NCBI GenBank assembly: GCA_965603825.1
Contig: CBFDEM010000056.1
Span: forward strand, 1-64,000
Source of the DNA: Blepharisma stoltei ATCC 30299
Lineage: Eukaryota > Protista > Ciliophora
Length of the DNA stretch: 64,000 bases
Direction: 5' to 3'
The notes under the pieces were generated by a model, which saw nothing but the letters and a program-made list of their open reading frames with translations, searched no databases and was not told the origin of the DNA. This document shows positions 1-18,773 of the stretch, one piece after another. Position 1 is the stretch's first letter, and each line of letters begins with the position of its first letter. Made by a program: the position numbers and the translations under genes.

Positions 1-3000
1 CACCCTAACACCCTAACACCCTAACAGCCCTAAGCAACCCTAACACCCTAACACCCTAACACCCTAACACCTAACACCCTAACACCCTAACACCCTAACA
101 CCCTAACACCTAACACCCTAACGACACCCTAACACCCTAACACCCCTAACACCCTAACACCCTAACCCTACCCCTAACACCCTAACACCCCTAACGACCC
201 TAACACCCTAACACCCTAACACCCTAACACCCTAACACCACTAACACCCTAACACCCTAACACCCTAACACCCTAACACCGCTAACACCCTAACACCCTA
301 ACACCCTAACACCCTAACCACCCTAACACCCTAACACCCTAACACCCTAACACCCCTAACACCCTAACACCCTAACACCCCTAACACCTCCTAACACCCT
401 AACACCCTAACCTACCCTAACACCCTAAACACCCTAACACCTCTAACGACCACTAACGACCCCTAACACCCTAACACCCTAACACCCTAACACCCTAACA
501 CCCTAACACCCTAACACCCTAACACCCTAACACCCTAACACCCTAACACCCTAACACCTAACACCCCTAACACCCTACCTAACACCTCAAACACCCTAAC
601 ACCCTAACACCCTAACACCCTAACACCCTAACACCCTAACACCCTAACACCCTAAACACCCTAACACCCTAACACCCTAACAACCCTAACACCCTAACAC
701 CCTAACAACCCTAACACCCTTAACACCCTAACACCCTAACACCCTAACACCCTAACACCCTAAACACCCCTAACACCCTAACACCTAACACCCTAACACC
801 CTAACACCCTAACACACCCTAACACCCTAACACCCTAACACCCTAACTACCCTAACACCCTAACACCCTAACACCCTAACACCCTAACACCCTAACACCC
901 TAACACCCTAACACCCTAACACCCTAACACCCTAACACCCTAACACCCTAACACCCTAACACCCTACACACCCTAACACCCTAACACCCTAACACCCTAA
1001 CACCCTAACACCCTAACACCCTAACACCCTAACACCCTAACACCCTAACACCCTAACACCCTAACACCCTAACACCCTAACACCCTAACACCCTAAACAC
1101 CCTAACCACCCTAACACCCTAACACCACTAACACCCTAACACCCTAACACCCTAACACCCTAACACCCTAACACCCTAACACCCTAACACCCCTAACACC
1201 CTAACACCCTAACACCCTAACACCCTAACCCCTAACACCCTAACACCCTAACACCCTAACACCCTAACACCCTCAACACCCTAACACCCTAACACCCCTA
1301 ACACCCTAACAGCACCCTAACACCCTAACACCCTAACACCCTAACACCCTAACACCCTAACACCCTAAACACCCTAACACCCTAAACACCCTAACACCCT
1401 AACACCCTAACACCCCTAACACCCTAACACCCTAACACCCTAACACCCTAACACCCCTAACACCCTAACACCCTAACACCCTAACACCCTAACACCCTAA
1501 CACCCTAACACCCTAACACCCTAACACCCTAACACCCTAACACCCCTAACACCCTAACACCCTAACAACCCCTAACACCCTAACACCCTAACACCCTAAC
1601 ACCCTAACACCCCTAACACCCTAACACCCTAACACCCTAACACCCTAACACCCTAACACCCTAACAACCCTAACACCCTAACACCCTAACACCCTAACAC
1701 CCTAACACCCTAACACCCTAACACCCTAACACCCTAACACCCTAACACCCTAACACCCCTAACACCCCTAACACCCTAACACCCTAACACCCTAACACCC
1801 TAACACCCTAACACCCTAACACCCTAACACCCTAACACCACTAACACCCCTAACACCCTAAACACCCTAACACCCTAACACCCTAACACCCTACACCCTA
1901 ACACCCTAACACCCTAACACCCTAACACCCTAACACCCTAACACCCTAACACCCTAACACCCTAACACCCTAACACCCTAAACACCCTAACACCCTAACA
2001 CCCTAACACCCTAACACCCTAACACCCTAACACCCTAACACCCTAACACCCTAACACCCTAACACCCTAACACCCTAACACCCTAACACCCACCCTAACA
2101 CCCTAACACCCTAACACCCTAACACCCTAACACCCCTAACACCCTTAACACCTAACACCCTAACACCCTAACACCCTAACACCCTAACACCCTAACACCC
2201 TAACACCCTAACACCCTAACACCCTAACACCCTAACACCCTAACACCCTAACACCCTAACACCTACACCCTAACACCCTAACACCCTAACACCCTAACAC
2301 CCTAACACCCTAACACCCTAACACCCTAACACCCTAACACCCTAACACCCTAACACCCTAACACACCCTAACACCCTAACACCCTAACACCCTAACACCC
2401 TAACACCCTAACACCCTAACACCCTAACACCCTAACACCCTAACACCCTAAACACCCTAACACCCTAACACCCTAACACCCTAACACCCCTAACACCCTA
2501 ACACCCTAACACCCTAACACCCTAACACCCTAACACCCCTAACACCCTAACACCCCTAACACCCTAACACCCTAACACCCTAACACCCTAACACCCTAAC
2601 ACCCCTAACACCCTAACACCCTAACACCCTAACACCCTAACACCCTAACACCCCTAACACCCTAACACCCCTAACACCCTAACACCCTAACACCCTAACA
2701 CCCTAACACCCTAACACCCTAACACCCCTAACACCCTAACACCCTAACACCCTAACACCCTAACACCCTAACACCCTAACACCCTAACACCCTAACACCC
2801 TAACACCCTAACACCCTAACACCCTAACACCCTAAACACCCTAACACCCCTAACACCCTAACACCCTAACACCCTAACACCCTAACACCCTAACACCCTA
2901 ACACCCTAACACCCTAACACCCTAACACCCTAACAACCCTAACACCCTAACACCCTAACACCCTAACACCCTAACACCCTAACACCCTAACACCCTAACA

Positions 3001-3027
3001 CCCCTAACACCCTAACACCCTAACACC
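1..3027 (+). repeat. Telomere, (CCCTAACA)n C-rich strand, ~3 kb
   Basis: Continuous 8-mer tandem array from base 1 with scattered small indels. CCCTAACA is the known heterotrich (Stentor/Blepharisma) telomere unit. Confidence 0.98.
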
Positions 3028-6000
3028 TGGGCTTCGGAATACAACTCCTTTACGCAAAATCCTTCAGAGAGCAAAAGCAAACTATTAAGACAGCCTGTGC
3101 ATTTATTTGTAGAAGATCCTGTGCATTTCTCGCATTCTTTAAAACAGGCTTCACATTTCCATGTATCTGACGATGCCCAGTAGCCATCCTGGCAGATGCA
3201 TGATCCAGTGTTGAAATCTGCATTGTCGACACAAGAGGTGCATGAAGTTTCAGATTCGCAAGTTTTGCATTGGTTTATGCATGACCTGCACTCAGTCAAT
3301 GTGGTGTCGTAATATAGGCCGTCATTACAGATACAACTATGATCTGAATCAGCGGAATTGGTGTGCATGTTGGTTGTGTCAGCACATTTAAGACATCCAG
3401 TGGAATCACAGGATACACACAAATCACCACATTCTTCACACTCGTTTCCATTGTAATAGGCATAACCATTACATTTGCAGCTTCCTAGATTTTCAGGGTC
3501 AATCGACATTGTATTTTCATCTAAGCACTTATTGCAGTTGTCTTGATCAGAGCAAGAGCTGCATAGAGTGCCACACTTAAAGCATCCTGTTGGGCTGGAA
3601 TATGCTGAATCACTACACTTGCAGCTTCCAGGATTTTGATTGTCAAGCACCATTGTGTCATTATCCATGCAATATTGGCAAAGTTCAGCTGATGTGCAAG
3701 ATCCGCAGAATTTGCTACAAGTTTCACAAGATTCCAACGTAGAGCTCCAATAGTGGTACTTGTCGCAAACGCATTTATCATTAGAATCAAGGGTAGAGTC
3801 TGATTTACAAGTGGTGCAAGTCCCGCTTTCTAAAGAAGTGCATTTTGAACAAATAGGGTCACTACAAAGATTGCAGGTATTTCCTGAAACGCAGCCATTG
3901 GTGCAGCTGCTTAAGCAAGATGAACATTGGTTAGACGAGTAGTATTCGGACGGCAAACAGTCAGCTAAGCAGTCTCCATACTCTGTACATTTTGAGCATC
4001 CACAGCCGACTGAGTCTCCATTTATGTGTCCAATAGCATAGTTATGAATCCTGAGTGAATAAATGTACCCTTTGAAAAAGGAGGCAGCTCTCATGCTCCC
4101 AATCTTTACCTCAGCTGCACTATTTTCATTGAAGTAGGAGCTAGAAGCAACCACAGAGTTTTCTAGGTTTGAAAGCAAGTAAAGCTTTAGCAGGAAGTCA
4201 TTGTCGTTTCATTTTTCCAGAATTCACGATATCTTTGTCCATTTATTGTAGCTGCTACTTTGGCTTGATACACATTCATTGTTCTTTATTGTTTCATCAC
4301 TGAGATTTATGAAATCATAGCAGAGTGATATGGAATAAGTTTGGGAACTGGCTTGAATTTTTAAAAGAAACAGAGCAGAGTCAGACGAGGATTTAGAAAT
4401 CACAATCATATCTTCAGTAGAAGCCATGACCAATAGTCAGATTTCAAAAGTATGGACGTGCCCAAAGGAAACCTGAGCTGTACTCGAGCCATCATTGAAA
4501 AGAGTTCCATATGATTTCCCGTTAAAATAAAGTCCGCGGTTTTTGAGTACCTTGGGATCATTTTCATCGTAATTAGGATAAAAGGAACTATTAGTACCAA
4601 AGAAGATAGGAAGAGAGCTTACTGTGTCAAGCTGAGTATTTGATAGCTGGTTAAATATGAAATTCACCATAAGCGAGTCAGAGTTGACAGCAGAGCAAGT
4701 AGTGCCATCCTGAGATGAGTAGCCTAATTGGCAATTGAATACGCAGTAGCCATCAGTAGTCATGTAAGATCCACCTACGCATCCTTTGCATTTATTAGCT
4801 TCGCGCCCACTGCATTCAGCACACATGCTATTGCAAGGGTTGCATGAAATCAAGTCAGCTGATATAACATAGTTACTTCCGCATTCACACACATGGTTAC
4901 TGTTAAAATCAGCATTGCTTACACAGGTTGAGCATGAGCCCCAGGAATCATCACACGTAGAACAAAGACTGTCTTCACATATTCCACAGTAAGAAGAAGT
5001 CAGACATCCATTTTGGCAATTATTAGGACAAGATTCGCATGAATTTGATTCAAGCTTGTAGGCCTCGGATGAGCTGCAAGTAGATAGGCATTGATTAAGG
5101 TCACTGCAAGCCTGGCAACCACAATTGTTGTTTCCTGCTTCTAGTGTTGTCAATACATAATTGTAAATTGTAAAAGAGTAAATATACCCACTGAAGAAAT
5201 ATTGAGATGAATATCCACCCAAAAAGAAGCCAGAGTTGTCGCTCTCATCATAGAAATAGGAGAGAAGTGTTTTTTGGTCTTTATATTCACTATTAGAATA
5301 GAAAACTAGTGTGTTTTCTCCGCTGCTAAATTTTAGAGTCCAAGTAAATCTGAATCACGAATTCTCAGTCACAGCGCTGCTCAAGCACAAATTCGATGTA
5401 GCTGACTTTGTGAAGTCGCTTAGCAGATAGCAAGAGGTGAAAAGCGTATCTGAGCCTGACAATTGAACTGCAGCCAATTCATTGGTACTGCTATCACTTT
5501 TTAAGCTCGCAAGAACAGCGTGAGTATCAGTGATTCCTGAAAGTGCATAGACCCACAAGTCAACAGTGTGTGAGTATCCAAGGTAAAATTGGCTTGAAGC
5601 AGGAGAAACTTGAGCATAAGAGCTTCCATCGAAATACAAACCTCTATATGGCAGAATTTTGGGATCATAATAATCATAGTTGGGATAATAGCTGCTGCTA
5701 TCTCCCAGAACCATCTCAATAGAGTTAGCTAAGTCATGCTGGGCATTGGAAATGCTTGAAAAAATATAATTCACTATTAAAGAGTTCCTTATTGTGTCAC
5801 TGCAACCATGAGCGCAATAGCTAGAGCAAATACCTTCAGCTGTCAAATATTGATCTGTAGCACAACTAAGACAGTTATAAATTTCATTTCCATTGCATGT
5901 CAAACAGCTAGAGCATAATGAGCATATATTATTATAAGGAGTGTAGCCATCTTGGCAATTGCATGATTTATCGACGAGATCTGCATGGTCAACACAAGAA

Positions 6001-9000
6001 GTGCAGGAAGTCTCAGATTCGCACGCTAAGCACTGATTTATGCATGACTTGCATAATGACTCTGCATCGTTGAAATATTGATCAGACGGGCAAGTGCAGA
6101 TTCCGTCATTTAAGCTCATCGAGCTGTCAATGCATGATAAGCAGAAATTCTCATTTTTGCATAAGCTGCAAGGAGATTTACATTTTTTGCACTCAGTCGA
6201 TGTGGTGTCGTAATATAGTCCATCATTACAGATACAACTGTGATCTGAATCAGCGGAGTTGATGTGCATGTTGGTTGTGTCAGCACACTTAAGACATCCA
6301 GTGGAATCACAGGATACACATAAATCACCACATTCTTCACACTCGTTTCCATTGTAATAGGCATACCCATTACATTTACAATTTCCTAGGCTTTCTGGGT
6401 CAATCGACATTGTATTGTCATCTAAACACTTATCGCAGTTTTCTTTATCAGAGCAAGAGCTGCATAAAGTGCCGCAAGCCTTGCAAGTTTCAGAGCTTTT
6501 GTCCCAATAAAATTCACTATTACATTTACACATCCTATTACTGTCATAATCTGCATTGACTTTACAGCCTGTGCAAGAGCCCTTTTCGAAGGTAATGCAG
6601 GTATTACAAATAGGGTCAAAACATACATTGCATCGATCAGCAGCAACACATCCAATATTTTGACAACTGCTCAGGCAAGACTCACATACATTTTGGTCTT
6701 TATTGTAAGATTCCGAAACAGCACAAGATGACAAGCATTGGTCAGAATCGGTGCAAGCTTGGCAGCCACAACCGCTGCTAGATGATGAGAAATCAGATCT
6801 TGGGTAGTTATAGATTTTCAATGAGTAAATGTATCCGATGAAGAAATCTTGGGAATTAAAATTTCCTAATTCAAAAGCTGCATCAGTATAGCCTTCGTAA
6901 TTGTAGCCATTAGCAGTTTGTGCTGCGGAAAATGAGCCATCTACATAAATGGCTATAGTAGACTCTCCATCATTAAATTCTAGACTTCAACTATATCTAT
7001 GCCATTCCCCCGTTGTTGTTTTGAAATTTGCACAAGTGTTAGAGCTTGTTGAAAGATCAAGAGAAGGTAATCCATAGCAAACAACTATCATTGGGGTACT
7101 TCCTTGAAAGTCAATCCCAGCACCCATTATATTACTCGAAGAAGACCACTTAGCTATTGCATATCCTTTATTAGTTTGATCAGGACTTATATAAACCCAT
7201 GTATCAATAGCATGTGAGAACCCGAGGTAGAATTGACTTGAGTTGTAAGGGTTTGGTGGCAATTTAGCACTTGAGCTTCCACTAAAATACAGTCCTCTAT
7301 ACTTTAGTATTTTCGGGTCTGATGAATCATAATCCGGATAATAGTCATTCGAACTGCCTAGATAGATTTCGATAAGGTTTTCAGACTCTTGCTGGTCATT
7401 CAAAATCTTTGTAAAGAGAAAATCAACAATGAGGGAGTTTCGGGTGGAGTCGCCGCACCCAAAAGCGCAGTAGCCCGAGCATATTCCTTCTGAAGTCAAA
7501 TAATGAGCGGAATAGCAGCTTTTGCATTGGTACATGTTAGTTCCACTGCAGGTTGCACAAGAAGAATCACACAAAGCGCATGTATCAATATTTGGGGTAT
7601 ATCCATCATTGCATATGCATAAATCTGAATCGTCAAATTTAGCATTATTTGTGCATTCTCTGCAGTCATTGGCTTGCAATGAAGCGCACTGTGAGCAAAG
7701 CTGATCATTGCACATATTGCAGCTGTTACCATTTATACACCAGCTGCAATCGCTTTTGCATGACATACAGCTAGTACCAGAATAATATTCGCTTTCTGAG
7801 CAAGTCCCCAAACAGTTATTTTGATTATCACAAATAGAGCATCCGCAAGAATTGGTGCCTTGGTCAAAGCTTGAGATTACATAACTGCTATACGAAAAAG
7901 AATAAAGATAGCCAGTGAAATACGAATTCGTTGATTTGCTTCCAAGTCTCGTTGTAAAATCTACACTTTCATCGAAAAATGACTCTGGAACTAAAGCTGA
8001 GTTCAGTAAGGTAGAATCGACATATAAATTTAAGCTAGAAGTATAGCTCGAAGACATGTCTGCTGACCATGAAATCCGTTTCCACTCAGAAAAGCTATAA
8101 GATCCGCTCTGCACGCATTTAAAATTTGAGGTTATTCCATCAGAAATACTTATAAAATCATAACAAATTTCTAAATAGTAGTCAGTCGATGAGCCATGAA
8201 CTTTAAGTGTAATAAGATCTCTACTCGAACTGTACTTTGCCATTATCACACCGTCTCCCTCATAATATCTCGGCATTGCCCAGAGGTCGAAGGTATGATA
8301 GAACCCAAACACAAATGGAGTTGCTCCACTATTCTGCAGAAATGTCGCATATGAGCTCCCAGAAAAATAAAGACCTCTGTCTTGCAGTACCCATGGATCA
8401 TTAGAGTCATAATTTGGATAAAAGTCATCAGAGCTGCCATAGTAAAGCTCAAAAGTACCCACATCTTTGTCAACCTGAGTATTTGTCAAGAAATTGAATT
8501 TGTAAGTAATAGATAGTAATGATTGCACTAAAGTGCATGAGTCCGCAGTTTGGGATTTCTCATAGTTTACAGGACAATCCTTTGCGCAAAATCCTTCAGA
8601 GAGCAAAAGCCAACTATTAAGACAGCTAGTGCATTTATTTGTAGAAGATCCTGTGCATTTCTCGCATTCTTTAAAGCAGGCTTCACAATTCCATGTATCT
8701 GATGATGCCCAATAGCCAGTTTGGCAGGTGCACGATCCAGTGTTGAGATCTGCGTTGTCGACACATGAGGTGCATGAAGTTTCAGAGTCGCAAGTTTTGC
8801 ATTGGTTTATGCATGACTTGCACTCAGCCGATGTGGTGTCGTAATATAGGCCGTCATTGCAGATACAACTGTGATCTGAGTCAGCAGAGTTGGTGTGCAT
8901 GTTGGTCGTATCAGCGCACTTAAGACATCCTGTAGAATCACAGGATACACATAAATCGCCACATGCTTCACACTCGTTTCCATTGTAATAGGCATACCCA

Positions 9001-12000
9001 TTACATTTGCAGTTTCCTACGTTTTCTGAATCAATCGACATTGTATTGTCATCTAAACACTTATCGCAGTTTTCTTTATCAGAGCAAGAGCTGCATAAAG
9101 TGCCACAAGCCTTGCAAGCTTCAGCATCCTTGTCCCAATAAAATTGGCTATTGCACTTGCATATCCCATCACTGTCATAAGCTGCATGGTCTCTACATCT
9201 TTTGCAAGAACCATATTCAAAGGTAGTGCAGGCTGCACAGATGGGGTCAAAACATATATTGCATCGATCAGCAGCTACACATCCATTAGCTTGGCAACCG
9301 GCTAGACAAGATTCACATATCCTTTGGTCTTTGTTATAAGATTCTGAAACAGTGCAAGTTGACAAACATTGGTCAGAATCGGTGCAAGCTTGGCAACCAC
9401 AGCCGCTGCTTGATGAAGAAAAATCTGTTTTTGGGTAGTTGTAGATTTTTAATGAATATATGTATCCGATGATGAAGTTTGTAGAACCATAACTTCCTAA
9501 CTCAAAAATTCCATCATTGTAATCTTCATAAAAAAATCCAGCTATAACTTGTGGATCACTAGCTACGCCGTCTAAGTAGATATATAGTGTAGATTCTCCA
9601 TCTTTAAATGCTAAACTTAGGCTGATTCTATGTCACTCTCCGAGAGTTGTTGGCAGAAATGCACAAGTATTGGAGGTCGTTGAAGAATCTAGGGCTTGCA
9701 ATACATAGCAAATGCTTATCAGTGGAGAGCCGTTTGAATAAATAAAGGCTAAAGTCATAATAGGGCCTAGAGAAGAAGTAGATTTTGTAATTAAGCAGCC
9801 TTGGCCCGTTTGATCAGTGCTTAAAAATGCCCAAGTATCAACAGAATGTGAAAACCCAAGGTATAATTGGCTTGAGTTGTAAGAGTTTGGGTGTAATTTA
9901 GCATTTGAGCTCCCACTAAAGTACAGTCCTCTGTACTCAAGAATTTTTGGATCTTCTGAGTCATAATTCGGATAATAGTCAGTTGAGCTGCCTAAAAAGA
10001 GCTCAATAGAGTTGATGCTGTCTTTCTGGTCATTAGAAATTGCTGTAAAGAGAAAATCAACAATGAGAGAGTTTCGGGTGGAGTCGCCACATCCAAATGC
10101 ACAGATACTTGAGCATATTCCTTCTGAAGTCAAATAACTACTGGAAGCACAGCTTTTGCATTGATACATGCTAATTCCACTGCAGGTTTCACAAGAAGAA
10201 TCGCAAGGAGAGCAAGCATCAATATCTTTACCATATTTGTCTTTGCACACACATATATTTGAGCTATCAAATTCAGAGTTAGTTGTGCATTCTGTACAGC
10301 TTTTGGCCTTCAATGATGAACAAGTTGAGCAAAGCTGATCATCGCACATGTTGCAGCTATCACCGTTTATACACCCACTGCAGCCACTTTTGCATGATAC
10401 GCAGCTGCCTTCAGAATAATATTCGTTTTCTGTACAAGTCACTAAGCAGTTATTCTGATTATCACAAGCCATGCATCCACAAGTATTGTCGCCTTGGCTA
10501 AAGTCCGTAATGACATAATTATACCAATAAATTGAATAAATGTACCCTGTAAAGTATGAAGCCGTTGATTTGCTGCCAAGATTTATCGTAAAATCAACAT
10601 TTTCATCAAAATATGTATCTGGAACTGTAGCAGATTCTAATAAGGTTGAATCAACATAGACAGAAATTTTGGAGCCATCAGTAGAGCTATAGCCAATTGT
10701 TCACGAAATTCTTTTCCACACAGAGTAGTCATACTTCCCACTTGTAATACATTGTAAAGTGGCAGTCGATCCATCTACTACACTTATAAAATTGTAGCAA
10801 ATTTTTAAGAAGTAGCTACTTGATGTCCCAGAAACTTGCAGGGTTATCAGATCCCTATCCGAGCTGTATTTTGAATATATCATACTGTCTCCCTCATAAT
10901 ATCGCGGCATCGCCCAAATATCAAAAGTATGTTTAATACCAAAGTAAAACGGATAAAGATTATTCGCCTTTAAATATGTGGCGTATGAATTTCCAGAAAA
11001 ATAAAGTCCTCTGTCTTTAAGCACCCATGGGTCATTAGAGTCATAATTTGGATAAAAATCATCAGAGTTGCCACAGTAGATTTCTAATGACTTATAGCCT
11101 ATATCACTTTGGGTATTTTTAAGGGCGTCAAACTGAAAAGCAATCAAAAATGTGGAGATTGCCACAGAGCAGATAAAATTATCATCACTGGAATATCCTG
11201 GAGGACACGTCTTTACACAAATTCCTTCAGGAAGCAGATACCAGTTATCTTTGCAGGCAGTGCATGCATTTGCGTAAGCTCCAGTACACGTGGTGCATTT
11301 TGAAAAGCAGGACTCACATATCAATGAGCTTGGGTTTCCATAGTATCCATTATAACATCTACAGTCAGAATTATTATCATCAGTAATGTAACCTTCTGCA
11401 TTCGTTGTGCAGACTCGACATCCGTCAGCCTCAACGTTAGAACAGGAAGAGCACAGGTAGTTATTGCATATACTGCAAGCTGAAGAAGTTTTGCAGCCGT
11501 TTTTACAGTCCTGAGGGCATGATTCACAACTGTTGCTTTCTTTATTATAAGCTTCATTGTACGCACAAGTTGATAAGCATGCTCCTAATTCAGTACACCA
11601 CTGGCAGCCACAGTTTGAGTTTCCAGCACTAATTGAGCCTAGAATGTAGTTATAGATCTTGATGGAGTAAATATAGCCTACATAGTAAGAGAGGGAGCTA
11701 CTATACCCGAGAACAAAATTCAAATAGAGGTCTTCATCAAAAATGAAATTATCTGTAAACGTTTGGGTGTCTTGATGGGTGCCATCAAGATAAGTGCTAA
11801 GGGTTGTTACTCCTGAAGAAAATCCAAAGGTTCATGTCAATCTTCCCCAGGAATTAGAAGAAGTTATAGTTGCTGAAGAACATAAATTATCTGAGTTGCT
11901 ATTGTCAACAGAGTACAGATGATAGCAAATTTTATATAGAGTATCAGAACCACCTACTATTTCCGCATACATTAAGTCGCTCGAGCCAAAAAATTTAGAC

Positions 12001-14780
12001 ATTATCGACCCTGAATATTGCAGAGGAAACAGCCAGAAGTCAACTGAATGAGAGTATCCAAGGTAGAGCTGACTGTCATTATATTGGGTTGGAGGAAATT
12101 GAGCATATGAACTACCAGTGAAGTATAAACCTCTGTAAGGCAATATCTTAGGATCATTATCATCATAAGTAGAATAGTAGTCATCCTTGCTGCCCAAGTA
12201 CATTATAAGCTGATTTGCACTGTCAGTTTGGCTGTTTGATATACTTGTAAAGACATAGTCTACAATTATTGACGTGCGACTTGCGTCTCCACAACCATAA
12301 GGACAGTAAGGTGTGCAAATTCCTTCTGAGGTCAAGTACCGTCCAGTAGGGCATGAGCTGCATTCAAGCATATATGGCCAGTTGCATTTACTGCAGTAAC
12401 TGCTACATTCAACACATGTTCCTGATACATCATCAAAATTTGCAGATCCACTGTTGCATCCACATAAGTCAGTACCAACCGTAGCATCAGTATAGCATTG
12501 GGTGCACGTCTCTGTCTCATAGACAGAGCACGTATAGCAGCCCGGATCATTACAAAGATTACAAGTAGTGGCACTTATGCATCCATATTTGCATGTGCTC
12601 ATGCAAGGCAAGCATGATCCATAGTAGCCGTAATAATGTATCCCACATTTATCTAAGCATATCAAATTTGATGCAGTGCAGTATGTACATCCAGAACAAC
12701 TCGTTGAAAAAAGCTGAGAAATCTTGTATGAGGACGCAGCTTCTGACATGTACACCATTTCATAGATGAAGCCTTTAAAATAATTAGAAACCGCAGAGTT
12801 CTTCCTTGTAGCTCCAAAAGTGACATAACTGGGAAGAGCTGGCTCCATTACTCCATCATATATATTAAATATAAAAGTCCTATCATTGAAGTTATAGGCT
12901 TTCCAATATGTAGTTCCACGTATAAAAGTTATTAAAACTGTAAGATAGACTCAGGAGTGCTTTGGAATATCAAAAAAGCTCATGGTTGGTTCCAAAATAT
13001 AGACGTAATCCTTCTTAGGGTCTGGATTTATCATAATTGCCAAGACTAGTGAAGTATCAGTGATCTCAATTTTAAGTACGGAGTTGCTATGATCATCGAC
13101 AGCGCTTAGAATGGATTGGGTGTTAGTCCCACCTTCATTTCTGAGCCAAAACCCATGAGTTTGATAATAGTTAAACATGATTTTATTATCTAGGGCCATA
13201 TATGAGCTCTCTCCGTTAAAGTAATATCCTCTTTGATAAGCTGGAATGGCATCTGAGGAGTCTGCGTTTGGGTAAAACTTTGTAGAATCGCTACCGGAGT
13301 TTAATGAAAAATACCCATATGTGTCTGTAATGGTTCCAGAAATTTCTGATAGGATAAAGTCATATACATAGCCTCCGCTACCTGTGCAGCCATCAGTAGC
13401 TTCATGATACGAAGTCGGGCAAGCTGTTATACAAGTATCATGATGCAAATAAAATCCGGTGCTGCATGATAAACAAGTATAATAATAAGAATCTCCACAA
13501 GTTTCACAATTCCCATAGCAGCTGTAATCTAGCTTGTCGCCATCACCGAATCCAGAACATTTAGTAACGCTTGAGCTATAGCAGAGGGTGCATCTATCTG
13601 AAAACACACAAGGATTTGTGCAGCTTGAGCCACAGGCCCCATCACAAGTTCCTGTAGTCTCTGCATAATGATAAATGTCACATTCGGAAAAGCAATCTCC
13701 TGAAGGTATGCACAGGCTGTTACAAGAATTGGTACAAGTTCCATAGAATGCTGAAATGTCTGTTACGGATAAAGCATCTATATAATAAGAAATCTTTGCA
13801 ATAAACCCAGTCCACCCTACCCCGCTTCCTGTATTCGGGTCTTGTGAATAGCCAATATAAAATGGTCCTTCATCGTCCCATATAAGCTTTTCGTCTCCAT
13901 CGTAAGAATTTGTGTCAACAAAGGCGTTATTCATATAAAATTTTGACTCGAAAGCTCCATTGGCTTTTGAAAATGTAAATACATAATTATTCCAAACTTG
14001 AACCCCTCCTGTAGCATAAGAATAAGCTGAAAAATCGTTTGCGCCGTTTTTTAGGTGGGTTCATTCATAATAAATATAGCCAGCAACGGTTCTTATTCCC
14101 CATATCTTGTTGCCTTGGCTATCAAACTTTTTGAATAAGCTCTGGTCAGCATCGCTAATCTGGTAGGCCCAAATTGAAAAAGTATGGTCTACATTCAGTC
14201 TAAACCCAACTTTTGAGATGCTATTTGGTGGCATCTGCATGTAGGAGCTTGATGAATCAAAGTAATATCCCCTGTCTTTGGTGGGGAAAGGATCATTACT
14301 ATCATAGTCTGGGTAAAATCTGTATGGATCGTTTCCACAGACTAAGCAGTCCCCACTATCGCTGTTAATTTCGAGGAATCCTTTGATTTTATCAAAACTA
14401 ATATCAAACACTGGCGAAGAAGTTCCCTTTTCACAAGTTCAGGCTCCCGTATAGCTAAAGCCATCTGGACATACAGTTAAGCATTCACCCGCTAAAAGAA
14501 AGTATCAACTTTTGCACTCATCGCAGCCATTATAGCTTGTGCTTGAGCATTGAAGACAGCCTGAAGGGCATGTGGTCACGCCCAATAGATCGCGCTGCGT
14601 TTTTTCTGATAGGTTTTCAAGCTCTTCATCAGCTTTTGGAATTATATCTATGCTTTTTGAGGGAGGCTTAAAAATGGAATTTAGAGTTTCTGATATACCT
14701 GCTTGAGGATTGACTGCTTCAGAATTTCAAATTTTAAAGAAAATTGCGAGTAAGCTTAAAGTAAAAAATTTGGTTATCAT
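3012..14780 (-). CDS. Giant (~3,922 aa) Cys-rich (furin/EGF-like) plus LamG/ConA-like multidomain secreted or surface protein, 3'-truncated by the telomere
   Basis: Ten track ORFs (14411, 13934, 12848, 11723, 10472, 9365, 6821, 5222, 4433, 4178) share one frame and are separated only by TGA (at least 13 in frame). I read the gaps and found no TAA/TAG. ATG at 14780 gives a signal-peptide-like MITKFFTLSLLAIFFKIWNSEA. Nine modules with RG(L/Y)YF...H.....W...F.G(Y/F)IY alternate with CxxC arrays. The stop TAG lies in telomeric repeat. Confidence 0.9.
3042..3575 (-). repeat. Intragenic near-identical repeat, copy of ~8575-9110
   Basis: Shared CKCNGYAYYNGNECE.CGDLCVSCDSTGCLKCADTTNMH...WASSDTW.CEACFKECEKCTGSSTNKCT...LLLSEGFC at both protein and DNA level. 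Boundaries approximate. Confidence 0.85.
6195..6850 (-). repeat. Intragenic near-identical repeat, copy of ~8820-9470
   Basis: Shared GCGCQACTDSDQCLS.C.VSESYNKDQ...CGTLCSSCSDKENCDKCLDDNTMSID...NDGLYYDTTS. Boundaries approximate. Confidence 0.85.
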
Positions 14781-15819: not shown

Positions 15820-18420
15820 TTAGTATCGAAAAATGACTTGACTTGGCCGATTTGGTGAGAAATTTCCATTAGAATTTGAAATTTCGATTTTGCAAACATC
15901 TGGAATTAATCCTGGGTCATTTATAATAGATCCTTGAATAACTCTATTATCAATCAATATCTCTACTTGTTTAGGAAGGCTTGAACAGCCATATATTTTT
16001 ATATTCGAAATATGCGGAAACTCATTTTCAGACTCATATTTACTATTTATAGGCTGAATATCCAATATATCAGTCGAGTAATTCATAAACCTCCAGTGGT
16101 AATCCATTCTAGTATAGTTTCCCTCATTAATTGTTCCAGATGAAATCCCATCATCAAAAACAGCTCTTCCTGCTGCTTCCAGATTAGAATTTAATGCAAC
16201 CAGTAGAGTTATATTAGAGTTTCTGAGTTCTTCTACACTTAAAGCAGTGTCTGCAGAGTCTAGTAGAGGAATTATAGATCCACCTCTCACATGAATATTT
16301 ATAAGCCCATGCAAAGGCATTTCTAAAGATATAACATAAGTTTTATCTAGCTTTATGCGAGCTCCACTATAAAAATTATATCAAATATCACCTGGAAAAT
16401 AAGAATCTGCCCTGCTTACCCCTTTCCACAAGCATGGGTGAACTATTAATGATTTTCCTAGCATAAAATGGTTAATCACATTTTCATACAATATTCTATC
16501 ATATGGATAACTAAAAAATGTAGGCTTAAAAAACATTTCTCCTGAAAAACTGGTAAAAAACATTTCAGTATAGATATAAAGCATAAGAAAATATCGATTT
16601 CTTATAGCCATATTAGAAGTCTCAAGCATATTTGTTCCAAAAGCCCAAGGTTCTTGAGGAAGAGCTTGATTATCATTATGGTTTCTTGCGAATGGATAAA
16701 GTGACCCCAGCTGCATCCACCTTGTACATAATTCTTCAGTGGTATCTCCAATAAATCCACAAATATCAGCACCTACATGAGGAATCCCAAACATCCCAAA
16801 ATTGAAAATTCCTATTATTGAGTATCTCATATACTCCCATTTAGCATAATTATCCCCGGTCCATTTAGAGCCAAATCTCCCATGTCCAGGGAAACTGCTT
16901 CTTGTTAAGACAAAAGCTCGCTTATTTAAATTTTCAGTGAAAAATCTATTGGTAGCAATTGTTTCCATGAATCCATATAATGAATGGACATTATATTCCA
17001 ATATTCCTCCATAATGGATTGATGCGACGTCTAAAGAATTTGTATTAATATCTTCTCCAGGAGTATATGGCATTGTGGTGCTATTAATGATTGTTGCTGG
17101 ATGGCCGAAATCTCCATTAATAAAATTGCTTGCTTCGTTCATATCGATTCATATACCAGAAAATTCAGTCAAATTATAGAAGCCAATTAGCTGGTCGACC
17201 CAAAAATCTGAAGTATTTGGATGAAACCAGTCTAAAAATACGGCGTCTCCAGGTCATACTACACCATCAGCAGGGTTTGAGTTGTAAGGATCTTTTATGT
17301 ATAGCTCTTTTTGGATCATTTCGTTATAGGCAGAATAGTTTTGTTTAGCAATGCCAGCGTCTATTATAGGGACATAATGCTTATGCAAGCTATGAAGATG
17401 GTCAATTCATGCTAAAAATTCTTCGTGAGGGTATCTGTCAGGATCTAGAGTAAAATCTTCGAATTTTGTCATGTAGTCGATGTCATTTCATATAGAATCC
17501 AACGGGAGTTTATATCTCATATATAAATCCACTATTTTTTCTATTATAGTCAAATTGTTATAGCCTCAATGCGATTGGTGCCATCCTAAAGACCAATATG
17601 GGGCAAGTGCTGGGAAACCTATAACTTCTTGATACTGCCTGACCACATCTGCAGCAGTCGGGCCTACAAAAACATAAAAATCAATTATTCCTCCAGTCGT
17701 CCTATATCCAACATAACTATTCCCTACAAATCCTGTCATTGCATTAGAATTTAACAGAAAGCCTCCAAAGCACTTAAAATCTTCATCAATTGCCACATAA
17801 AATGGGTGAACAGAATACATATTTCCATTAGGGTTATTTCCATCATCAATAGGAGAGCATCTATCTCTAGACCACATAGTATATTCTCCTCTATTTAAGG
17901 TTAAATTTGATACCCTTTCCCCAAATCCCATAATTTTAATATCATAGTCAAGGATATTAAAAAAAGCGATATCTTGGTCATTGTAAGAAAACAAGCTGTT
18001 TGGGTCAAGGTTAAAAATGACTTTTCCGTCAGATTTCCTAATGATGAGGATTCCCAAAGGATCTTCGTCTATCATGACATCGTATTTTGGCTCAAATGTA
18101 GTCTGATTATAAGGGACGACTACTTTTGGGACTTCTCATCTGCTATGTTCTGTGTCTTTTATTTGGATTCTGACTCTTTCTGATGTTTCATAAGTAATAT
18201 TAATTGTAAGCTTTTGAATTGTATGGCTCTTATTTTGATCAGAAATAAGTTTTGAGGAAGGGTTGAAAGAAGCATAAGCTACTATCCCTTGAGAAGTTCT
18301 TGTTATATTCTTAACTGTGTATGGGACTTGGCACTCTTTAAGGATATCTTCGTTTATATATGTTTGAGTGCTTGTACTGATCAGAATCAGGAAAATCAAC
18401 CAATTACTGATCTTCGCCAT
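15820..18420 (-). CDS. Glycoside hydrolase family 31 alpha-glucosidase, secreted or lysosomal, 866 aa
   Basis: Four same-frame ORFs joined by TGA=Trp. Catalytic G-I-W(TGA)-IDMNE, plus I-W(TGA)-NDIDYM, V-W(TGA)-PG, WTGDN, GADICGF, RWMQLG, PFARNH. N-terminal signal peptide; ends in TAA. Confidence 0.95.
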
Positions 18421-18773
18421 TAATTGATTATGTGGGATTCTAAATATCCATCTAATAATCTGATCTAATCTAATTAATTATTAGAAGAAATAAAGCTTAA
18501 AACCAATATAGAACCATGAAAAATAGCATTTTAATACAGTCAAATGTATAAATAAAAGACAATAATTAATAAATTTATAAAAATTTGCATTTTATTATGT
18601 TATTTATTATTTATTTTAATTTCTGTATGGAATAATTGCTTTTAAAGAATTTATTTTACTATCAATAAGATATAATTTCACTATAATAGACATGCATAAT
18701 TTTCCATATACAAAAAAGAGAATTGAAAATTTTTCATTAATAAATTTTTAAGTCTTACTTTAATTCAATAAAA

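What the first reader, a model, noticed from the sequence alone, without database searches (positions are those of the whole stretch)
3000..4200. The telomere cuts into a coding sequence and supplies its stop codon
Seen: the 11.8-kb ORF has no stop or 3'UTR of its own and reads ...EAQ-VLGC-TAG, with the last codons made of TGTTAGGG repeats. The 8-nt unit contains TAG and 8 is not a multiple of 3, so the telomere terminates any frame within three repeats. The break falls mid-module (paralogous modules continue C-P into another LamG-like domain), and no TM or GPI tail is reached. Known: heterotrich macronuclei show alternative telomere addition. Inference: telomere addition could act as a somatic C-terminal truncation system, producing anchorless secreted isoforms with different module numbers from one modular surface gene.
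Basis: partly seen in the sequence, partly recalled or inferred. Interest (0 to 1): 0.85.

Follow-up and report, generated by a model that had tools for sequence, protein, structure and literature searches.

The report
Telomere-capped, truncated giant surface-protein gene
At the end of a Blepharisma stoltei somatic contig a telomere sits directly on the coding sequence of a 3,922-residue family gene and supplies its stop codon, but this is one case of the gene-internal telomere addition already published for this genome, and nothing shows it is a system for making isoforms.

Summary
Read with UGA=Trp, a single 11,769-nt ORF (window 3012-14780, minus strand) runs into 3,027 bases of CACCCTAA repeats. 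Its TAG lies inside the repeat, and UGUUAGGG closes every frame within 7 codons.

The genome is Blepharisma stoltei ATCC 30299 (41.46 Mb, 64 contigs). The 3,922-aa protein, with its telomere-encoded tail VLGC, is already in NCBI and UniRef. It has nine LamG-like modules separated by Cys-rich arrays. It lacks the C-terminal multi-pass membrane region that 85% of its large homologues carry.

The "truncation system" reading is not supported:
- The genome paper says most contig ends were trimmed by eye and re-capped with the telomere of one read.
- It reports 18,396 intragenic telomere addition sites, five-fold rarer per kb than intergenic ones.
- It already asks how mRNAs from 3'-truncated genes are tolerated.

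In my sample, 1 of 19 other contig ends also has a long ORF (a LINE-like element) ending in the telomere. Earlier notes of this scan list several more such ends in the same genome.

I could not tell whether 3028 is the main end or a rare one. One thing stays unexplained: DNA runs hold a 98% copy of the segment 7981-8575 that is absent from the assembly. Interest is low.

The parts
1..3027 (.). Telomere cap: C-strand repeats (CACCCTAA)n, noisy, 3 kb long
   Evidence: 371.5 copies, 93% match, 5% indels. [quoted passage not shown] The reported modal telomere length is 209 bp.
3026..3027 (.). Junction sequence: 2 nt (CC on the plus strand, GG on the coding strand) that could be telomeric or chromosomal
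   Evidence: Read. It matches the 2-3 bp overlap reported for addition sites in this genome.
3012..3014 (-). TAG stop codon lying inside the telomeric repeat
   Evidence: The annotated public gene also ends at base 3012.
3015..3026 (-). Four telomere-encoded codons (Val-Leu-Gly-Cys)
   Evidence: The tail is identical in public protein P0009.
3028..3040 (-). Last 13 chromosomal nt, with no counterpart in the paralogous module
   Evidence: homology to 8587-9107 starts at 3041.
3041..3575 (-). Terminal Cys-rich array, a duplicate of internal arrays (91% to 8574-9107, 92% to 6188-6476), with a 1-nt insertion near 3045
3954..4715 (-). Ninth and last LamG/ConA-like module
   Evidence: E 1.5e-49 to the internal module. 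Pfam PF13385 at 23.1 bits, below the 27.6 cut-off.
3012..14780 (-). Whole CDS under UGA=Trp: 3,922 aa with a signal-peptide-like start, nine LamG-like modules separated by Cys-rich arrays (8.7% Cys), and no TM region
   Evidence: It equals P0009 from NCBI/UniRef.

Best explanation
This is the left end of contig 56 of the Blepharisma stoltei ATCC 30299 macronuclear assembly. Telomerase added CCCTAACA/TGTTAGGG repeats, with 2 nt of microhomology, to a break in the 3' part of one member of a very large gene family. Family members have a signal peptide, repeated LamG-like and Cys-rich modules, and a C-terminal multi-pass membrane region.

The macronuclear copy therefore lacks at least the membrane region. 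The telomere supplies a UAG because the 8-nt repeat carries TAG in all three frames.

Shown here: the junction, the frame, the missing domain, the identity of the genome, and the published way its contig ends were built.

Inferred: this is an ordinary by-product of Blepharisma's imprecise, genome-wide chromosome fragmentation and healing. It would be one of the roughly 18,000 published intragenic addition sites, or a fixed end of the same kind. It is not a device that makes isoforms.

Left open: whether most macronuclear molecules end at 3028 or only the read used for the cap. I put this at roughly even odds.
For: Identity of the genome:
- 41,464,486 bases in 64 contigs.
- CCCTAACA telomere, UGA=Trp, 64 telomere-to-telomere contigs.
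- Paralogues are named Blepharisma stoltei.

Junction and ORF.

The kind is published. There are 28,309 intergenic and 18,396 intragenic addition sites, at 2.81 versus 0.562 per kb, with 2-3 bp junction overlap. The authors ask explicitly about mRNAs from 3'-truncated genes.

Curation of contig ends.

The case is not unique. The left end of contig 11 has a 1,095-aa LINE-like ORF ending ...EKIGC-TAG in the telomere. Earlier first-reader notes of this scan list six or more other such ends. These notes are leads only.

The family normally has a membrane region:
- 80 of 94 homologues of 1,500 aa or more have TM-like segments in their last 450 aa. The closest giant paralogues have 4-5.
- At least 74 copies of that domain occur in the genome, and none on contig 56.

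No second half of the gene is in the assembly.
Against: - The flank is not AT-rich as described for typical addition sites: 37% GC against a mean of 25% at 19 other ends.
- Contig ends are mostly non-coding. Only 2 of 19 abut an open frame of 100 codons or more, against 54-62% of random internal positions (p = 1.5e-5). A coding end is therefore the exception.
- In DNA runs X1 and X2 no contig was reported leaving the reference at 3028, and depth next to the end equals the gene body. This would fit a dominant, possibly constitutive truncation rather than a rare event. The stretch I laid started only 48 nt from the junction, so such contigs may have been counted as overhangs.
Confidence: 0.72

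Rival explanations
1. Curation artefact in frequency. Most macronuclear molecules continue past 3028 into the rest of the gene. The curators trimmed that sequence off as 'cruft' because the modular repeats gave uneven mapping, and a single rare telomere-bearing read was used to cap the contig. The truncated gene model is then not the cell's main gene.
For: [quoted passage not shown]
- 38,686 of 46,705 addition sites rest on one read.
- The caps are noisy and have a median of about 2 kb, against a modal telomere of 209 bp.
- DNA runs hold a 98% copy of 7981-8575, with flanks absent from the assembly, and depth is 1.3-1.45x there.
Against: - No contig in X1 or X2 was reported diverging at 3028.
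- The unitig at 3114-3417 has the same depth as the gene body: 136 vs 122, 53 vs 58, 152 vs 134.
- Contigs show presence, not absence, so this is weak.
Confidence: 0.4
2. One reading: telomere addition is used as a somatic system that cuts this modular surface gene at different modules, giving anchorless secreted isoforms.
For: - The product lacks the family's membrane region.
- The telomere guarantees a stop in any frame.
- Run X8, labelled RNA only as a guess, holds contigs of this gene, 33 of them at least 99% identical.
Against: - Only one site is seen.
- Intragenic sites are five-fold depleted genome-wide.
- Module number already varies among many germline-encoded paralogues.
- No X8 contig covers 3001/3005.
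- A retrotransposon ORF ends in the same way, so the pattern needs no function.
Confidence: 0.05
3. Constitutive truncation with consequence. 3028 is the fixed developmental breakpoint, at or just inside a germline-limited segment. This strain's macronucleus then holds only the anchorless version, which is expressed as a giant secreted ectodomain or is a decaying subtelomeric copy.
For: - Depth near the end equals the gene body, and no alternative path was seen in X1 or X2.
- Homology to the paralogue stops 13 nt before the telomere.
- The unassembled 98% copy of 7981-8575 begins exactly at the corresponding point, 8575, and is flanked by AT-rich DNA absent from the macronuclear assembly.
- The ORF is intact over 3,922 codons.
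- In the other-strain-like contigs, 8 of 15 changed codons are synonymous and no stops appear.
Against: - The germline beyond macronuclear contig ends has not been assembled, and L025 carries the same cap.
- Joining the terminal copy to the 7981-8575-like segment at the homologous point would be out of frame because of the 1-nt insertion (my reading).
Confidence: 0.3

Closest known systems
Alternative telomere addition sites (ATASs) of the B. stoltei macronucleus (Singh et al., PNAS 2023, PMC9942806 with SI; bioRxiv 10.1101/2021.12.14.471607)
   Same: Same genome and same repeat. There is no gap between telomere and chromosome and a 2-nt junction overlap. The site is intragenic and leaves a 3'-truncated gene. 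The authors count 18,396 such sites and raise the question of their mRNAs.
   Different: This one is the assembly's contig end rather than a soft-clipped minority read. Its flank is less AT-rich than typical. Its read support is unknown.
Macronuclear deletion of the subtelomeric A surface-antigen gene in Paramecium tetraurelia d48, with telomeres added near the gene's 5' end (from my own knowledge, not checked here)
   Same: A large subtelomeric surface-protein gene in a ciliate macronucleus is cut short by the choice of telomere addition site.
   Different: In d48 nearly the whole gene is lost and the state is inherited epigenetically. Here only the 3' part is missing, and inheritance or variability is untested.
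Chromosome breakage and healing that truncates subtelomeric genes in Plasmodium falciparum, e.g. KAHRP and Pf11-1 (from my own knowledge, not checked here)
   Same: Telomere repeats are added directly to coding sequence at short microhomology, giving truncated genes at chromosome ends.
   Different: Those are spontaneous mitotic events in a conventional nucleus. Here fragmentation is a regular part of macronuclear biology.
Alternative fragmentation of Oxytricha nanochromosomes (PMC3558436)
   Same: Alternative telomere positions give different somatic DNA isoforms.
   Different: Oxytricha sites are recurrent and tend to be intergenic. They change gene content per chromosome, not the protein's length.

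Membership tests
B. stoltei alternative telomere addition site (as defined by MILTEL/BleTIES in PMC9942806 SI) | At least 3 telomere units directly abutting chromosomal sequence with zero gap | tested here: met
B. stoltei alternative telomere addition site (as defined by MILTEL/BleTIES in PMC9942806 SI) | Short (about 2-3 bp) junction sequence shared by telomere and chromosome | tested here: met
   Two nt (GG on the coding strand, 3026-3027) fit both readings. The original uncut sequence is unknown, so this is inferred.
B. stoltei alternative telomere addition site (as defined by MILTEL/BleTIES in PMC9942806 SI) | AT-enriched chromosomal flank (G and C fall to about 9-11% each near +37) | tested here: not met
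   The flank at +6 to +65 is 37% GC, against a mean of 25% at 19 other contig ends. This is a tendency, not a strict rule.
B. stoltei alternative telomere addition site (as defined by MILTEL/BleTIES in PMC9942806 SI) | Only a minority of reads at the position carry the telomere while the others read through | tested here: inconclusive
   Only assembled contigs of public runs were available. None was reported leaving the reference at 3028 in X1 or X2, but the junction was only 48 nt from the end of the stretch I laid.
Blepharisma LamG-like / Cys-rich multi-pass membrane protein family (paralogues named 'TNFR-Cys domain-containing' or 'Malectin domain-containing' in UniRef) | LamG/ConA-like modules alternating with Cys-rich (CXXC-type) arrays | tested here: met
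   Nine modules. The internal module hits at least 120 places in the genome. There are 287 homologues at E<=1e-10. Pfam PF13385 is below its cut-off (23.1 against 27.6 bits) but is on record for the whole protein.
Blepharisma LamG-like / Cys-rich multi-pass membrane protein family (paralogues named 'TNFR-Cys domain-containing' or 'Malectin domain-containing' in UniRef) | C-terminal region with several TM helices (conserved F/L-RFW motif in some members) | tested here: not met
   The focal protein has none. 80 of 94 large homologues have it. The genome holds at least 74 copies, none on contig 56.
Programmed, function-bearing alternative fragmentation that yields protein isoforms | Several recurrent, well-supported telomere sites within the gene, each with a matching stable transcript | not testable with these tools
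   Raw long reads and RNA reads of this strain were not available, and the one read-laying run returned contigs only.

The most novel reading that the evidence does not exclude
3028 is the predominant developmental breakpoint. It lies just inside a germline-limited segment that interrupts the last module, and the germline gene continues beyond it (the unassembled 98% copy of 7981-8575 and onward to a membrane region). Whether the segment is excised or healed with a telomere would then decide between a membrane-bound receptor and a giant secreted ectodomain. The all-frame UAG of the heterotrich telomere would make every such break translatable. The choice could differ between clones, as in Paramecium d48.
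Probability: 0.08. Interest if true: 0.6.

Novelty: new member of a known kind. Interest (0 to 1): 0.2.

Why it matters
As it stands it matters little. It is one visible example of a published property of this genome, and it warns that proteins at Blepharisma contig ends, including a 3,922-aa entry in NCBI and UniRef whose last four residues are telomere-encoded, may be artefacts of how the ends were curated.

The all-frame stop in UGUUAGGG is a tidy general point. In a nucleus where about 1 in 8 reads carries a telomere and thousands of sites fall inside genes, every truncated copy gets a stop within 7 codons instead of yielding non-stop mRNA. That is arithmetic, not evidence of selection.

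It would matter more if the end proved to be the dominant form and coupled to elimination of a germline segment.

Tried and rejected
- Standard or bacterial code: the ORF breaks at 13 TGA codons. Rejected in favour of UGA=Trp.
- A second half of the gene elsewhere in the macronuclear assembly: none. DNA of 3028-4227 matches only internal paralogues. The best LamG module outside contig 56 is 33% identical. No orphan TM domain sits at a contig start.
- Protein database search with the last 150 aa: nothing.
- Exact look-up of an internal ORF piece: nothing.
- Look-up of the whole protein: it returned only this contig's MAC+IES version, which carries the same telomere cap and so gives no view beyond 3028.
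- Read support for the junction: only contigs were available, the telomere bin is swamped by depths of 30,000-60,000, and no bridging piece was listed.
- A pure chimeric artefact with no such molecule: unlikely, because caps came from reads mapped to the end.
- An alternative frame with its own stop: the other two frames also have no stop between the Cys-array and the repeat that would give a normal gene end.
- Pfam on the family's C-terminal membrane region: no family found.
Full report
**What is in the sequence**

Window 1-3027 is a tandem array of 371.5 copies of CACCCTAA, at 93% match and 5% indels. From 3028 the sequence is coding-like.

Under the bacterial code the minus strand shows a chain of ORFs separated only by TGA. 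With TAA and TAG as the only stops there is one ORF at 3012-14780: 11,769 nt and 3,922 codons, with 13 in-frame TGA. It begins with Met and a hydrophobic, signal-peptide-like N-terminus.

It ends ...EGFCVKELYSEAQ, then VLGC, then TAG. The TAG is at 3012-3014 and the last four codons lie within the repeat. TAG is an ordinary stop here: of 21 ORFs of at least 300 codons in the window, 7 end in TAG and 14 in TAA. TGA occurs in frame 49 times against 93 for TGG.

(TGTTAGGG)n reaches TAG at codon 2, 4 or 7 depending on frame, and the C-strand reaches TAA in the same way.

**Which genome this is**

The window is contig 56 of an assembly of 41,464,486 bases in 64 contigs. That matches the Blepharisma stoltei ATCC 30299 macronuclear assembly:
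- 41 Mb in 64 telomere-to-telomere contigs;
- telomere unit CCCTAACA;
- UGA=Trp;
- 15-16-nt introns.

Paralogues found in the protein databases are labelled Blepharisma stoltei. The exhaustive protein search returned a 3,922-aa representative, P0009, identical residue for residue to my translation, including the telomere-encoded VLGC. It is held by NCBI, UniRef and nr, and the public gene feature ends at base 3012. The gene model is therefore already public.

**What the gene is**

The protein has nine LamG/ConA-like modules separated by Cys-rich arrays (8.7% Cys) and no TM segment.
- Pfam gives Laminin_G_3 just under its cut-off for the last module (23.1 against 27.6 bits).
- It also gives weak Giardia-VSP-like hits for the Cys arrays.

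The family is very large. One LamG-like module hits at least 120 places in the genome, in tandem clusters on contigs 61, 6, 26, 28, 29 and 63. There are 287 homologues at E<=1e-10 in the 1.84-billion-protein library.

Of 94 homologues of at least 1,500 aa, 80 have TM-like segments in their last 450 residues. The closest giant paralogues (P0010 with 11 modules, P0013, P0014, P0019 and others) have 4-5. That C-terminal region occurs at least 74 times in the genome but never on contig 56.

**Where the break falls**

The terminal Cys array (3041-3575) is 91% identical to an internal copy (8574-9107) and 92% to another (6188-6476). After ...EGFC-K the internal copy continues DCPVNYEKSQ... into the next LamG-like module.

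The terminal copy differs in three ways:
- it has a 1-nt insertion near 3045;
- 13 unrelated nt follow (3028-3040);
- the telomere comes next.

The break is therefore in the linker after a complete Cys array, not inside a domain. Two nt at the junction (GG) fit both telomere and chromosome, as described for addition sites in this genome.

**How the contig end was made**

This is the key point for the interpretation. The genome paper states:
- contig ends with poor read agreement ('cruft') were trimmed by eye;
- 'most of the contigs' were trimmed in this way and 1.3 Mb was removed;
[quoted passage not shown] The noisy 3-kb repeat fits a single-read cap. The 20 caps I measured run from 61 to 3,844 bp with a median of about 2 kb, although the modal telomere length is 209 bp.

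**The phenomenon is published**

The same paper reports 46,705 alternative telomere addition sites, 38,686 of them on a single HiFi read at 145x coverage. Of these, 28,309 are intergenic (2.81 per kb) and 18,396 intragenic (0.562 per kb). [quoted passage not shown]

At that rate an 11.8-kb gene is expected to carry about 6.6 sites. The five-fold depletion inside genes argues for avoidance, not use.

**Controls I could run**

- One, on contig 11, has a 1,095-aa LINE-like ORF (endonuclease plus reverse transcriptase) running into the telomere and ending ...EKIGC-TAG.
- One, on contig 8, has a 140-codon plus-strand frame abutting the repeat.
- The rest abut only short frames.

Random internal positions abut a frame of at least 100 codons in 54-62% of draws, against 2 of 19 ends (p = 1.5e-5). 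Contig ends are thus mostly non-coding, and the focal end is one of a minority. Its flank is 37% GC against a mean of 25%.

Earlier first-reader notes of this scan list six or more further contig ends in this genome with a telomere inside coding sequence. A follow-up judged the LINE case to be ordinary healing. I treat these notes as leads only.

**Read evidence**

Only assembled contigs of public runs could be laid, on 2980-8900.
- The unitig next to the end (3114-3417) has the same depth as the gene body: 136 vs 122, 53 vs 58, 152 vs 134.
- In X1 all four partly fitting contigs are accounted for at other places, and X2 has none. No contig was reported leaving the reference at 3028.

This leans towards 3028 being a well-used end. 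But contigs drop rare forms, five loose ends of X6 were not shown, and my stretch began only 48 nt from the junction, so a diverging contig might have been counted as an overhang. I leave major versus minor at about even odds.

A run guessed to be RNA (X8) covers 28 of 30 bins. It has 33 contigs at least 99% identical to the window and 24 at 95-99%. In the diverged contigs, 8 of 15 changed codons are synonymous, cysteines are kept and no stops appear. No X8 contig covers 3001/3005. The gene or its allele thus looks transcribed, but nothing shows transcripts entering the repeat.

**The germline side**

The look-up of P0009 returned GCA_914767885.1, contig CAJZBQ010000056.1. It is identical to the window for bases 1-5189, including the same cap, and then carries at least 8 insertions of 268-1,520 bp inside the gene. 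This is the MAC+IES assembly. Three loose ends (5178, 6860, 6873) match these insertions exactly.

That assembly is scaffolded on the macronuclear contig, so it says nothing about DNA beyond 3028. Its authors note that eliminated sequence at chromosome boundaries remains to be analysed.

**Unexplained**

Loose ends at 3572, 6477, 7981 and 8575 lead into AT-rich DNA. None of the four is in the window or in L025. The three I searched in the genome (3572, 7981, 8575) are also absent from the 41-Mb assembly.

In X1 and X2 the only contigs on 7942-8509 carry 11-13 differences from the window. Eight of these are shared with X8, and by codon they are 5 synonymous and 7 non-synonymous. X6 shows the reference letters, and depth over 7930-8900 is 1.3-1.45x.

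A 98% copy or allele of 7981-8575 therefore exists in this organism's DNA but not in the assembly. Its right edge, 8575, corresponds exactly to the point (3041) where the terminal copy stops matching the internal one.

One reading is that the germline or trimmed DNA continues the gene beyond a germline-limited segment, whose first 13 nt remain under the telomere. A simple homologous join would be out of frame because of the 1-nt insertion, so I do not press this.

**Verdict**

The sequence facts are right and the arithmetic is neat. The case is an instance of a published, genome-wide and apparently disfavoured phenomenon, at a contig end that the assembly's authors defined by hand. The same pattern at a retrotransposon ORF shows that it needs no function. 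The 'truncation system' is not supported. The most interesting reading still open is a dominant breakpoint coupled to elimination of a germline segment, which I rate at about 8%.

Noticed in passing
L015 (G000 contig 11, bases 1-3,950): A 1,095-aa LINE-like ORF (AP-endonuclease plus reverse transcriptase) on the minus strand runs into the telomere at base 663 and ends ...KIFDEKIGC-TAG, so its stop also comes from the repeat. The genome papers report such macronuclear retrotransposon genes with negligible expression.
   Followed up: partly
window 5178-14146; L025 whole: The MAC+IES assembly (GCA_914767885.1) has at least 8 germline insertions (IESs) of 268-1,520 bp inside the giant gene, at window positions ~5178, ~6006, ~6794-6860, ~7150, ~10443, ~11238, ~13385 and ~14129. 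More lie in the upstream GH31 gene.
   Followed up: partly
window 7942-8575, 3572 and 6477: Public DNA runs hold a 98% variant of 7981-8575. They also hold junctions at 3572, 6477, 7981 and 8575 into AT-rich DNA that is absent from the window and from L025; the flanks at 3572, 7981 and 8575 are also absent from the 41-Mb assembly (6477 was not searched there). These could be unannotated IESs, trimmed 'cruft', or a second copy or allele.
   Followed up: partly
window ~3045: The terminal Cys-array copy has one extra base relative to its 91%-identical internal paralogue just before homology ends. Without it the last codons would read KDCIPKPR-C-TAG, and KDC matches the paralogue. Because it lies in the last 20 nt before a single-read cap, it could be a consensus error.
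   Followed up: no
L005-L024 (left ends of G000 contigs 1-20): Telomere caps are 61-3,844 bp long (median about 2 kb) and noisy. Contig 14's left end (L018) starts with several hundred bases of degraded C-rich sequence that barely resembles the repeat.
   Followed up: no
L012 (G000 contig 8, from base 2160): A 140-codon plus-strand open frame with hydrophobic segments starts directly at the telomere junction. It may be a 5'-truncated gene.
   Followed up: no
window 15820-18477 (minus strand): The upstream neighbour is an 886-codon open frame that looks to me, by eye, like a family-31 glycoside hydrolase; I did not test this. A separate 866-aa GH31 gene with Pfam hits on record lies further upstream in the MAC+IES record. 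About 1 kb of AT-rich spacer separates the open frame from the start of the giant gene.
   Followed up: no
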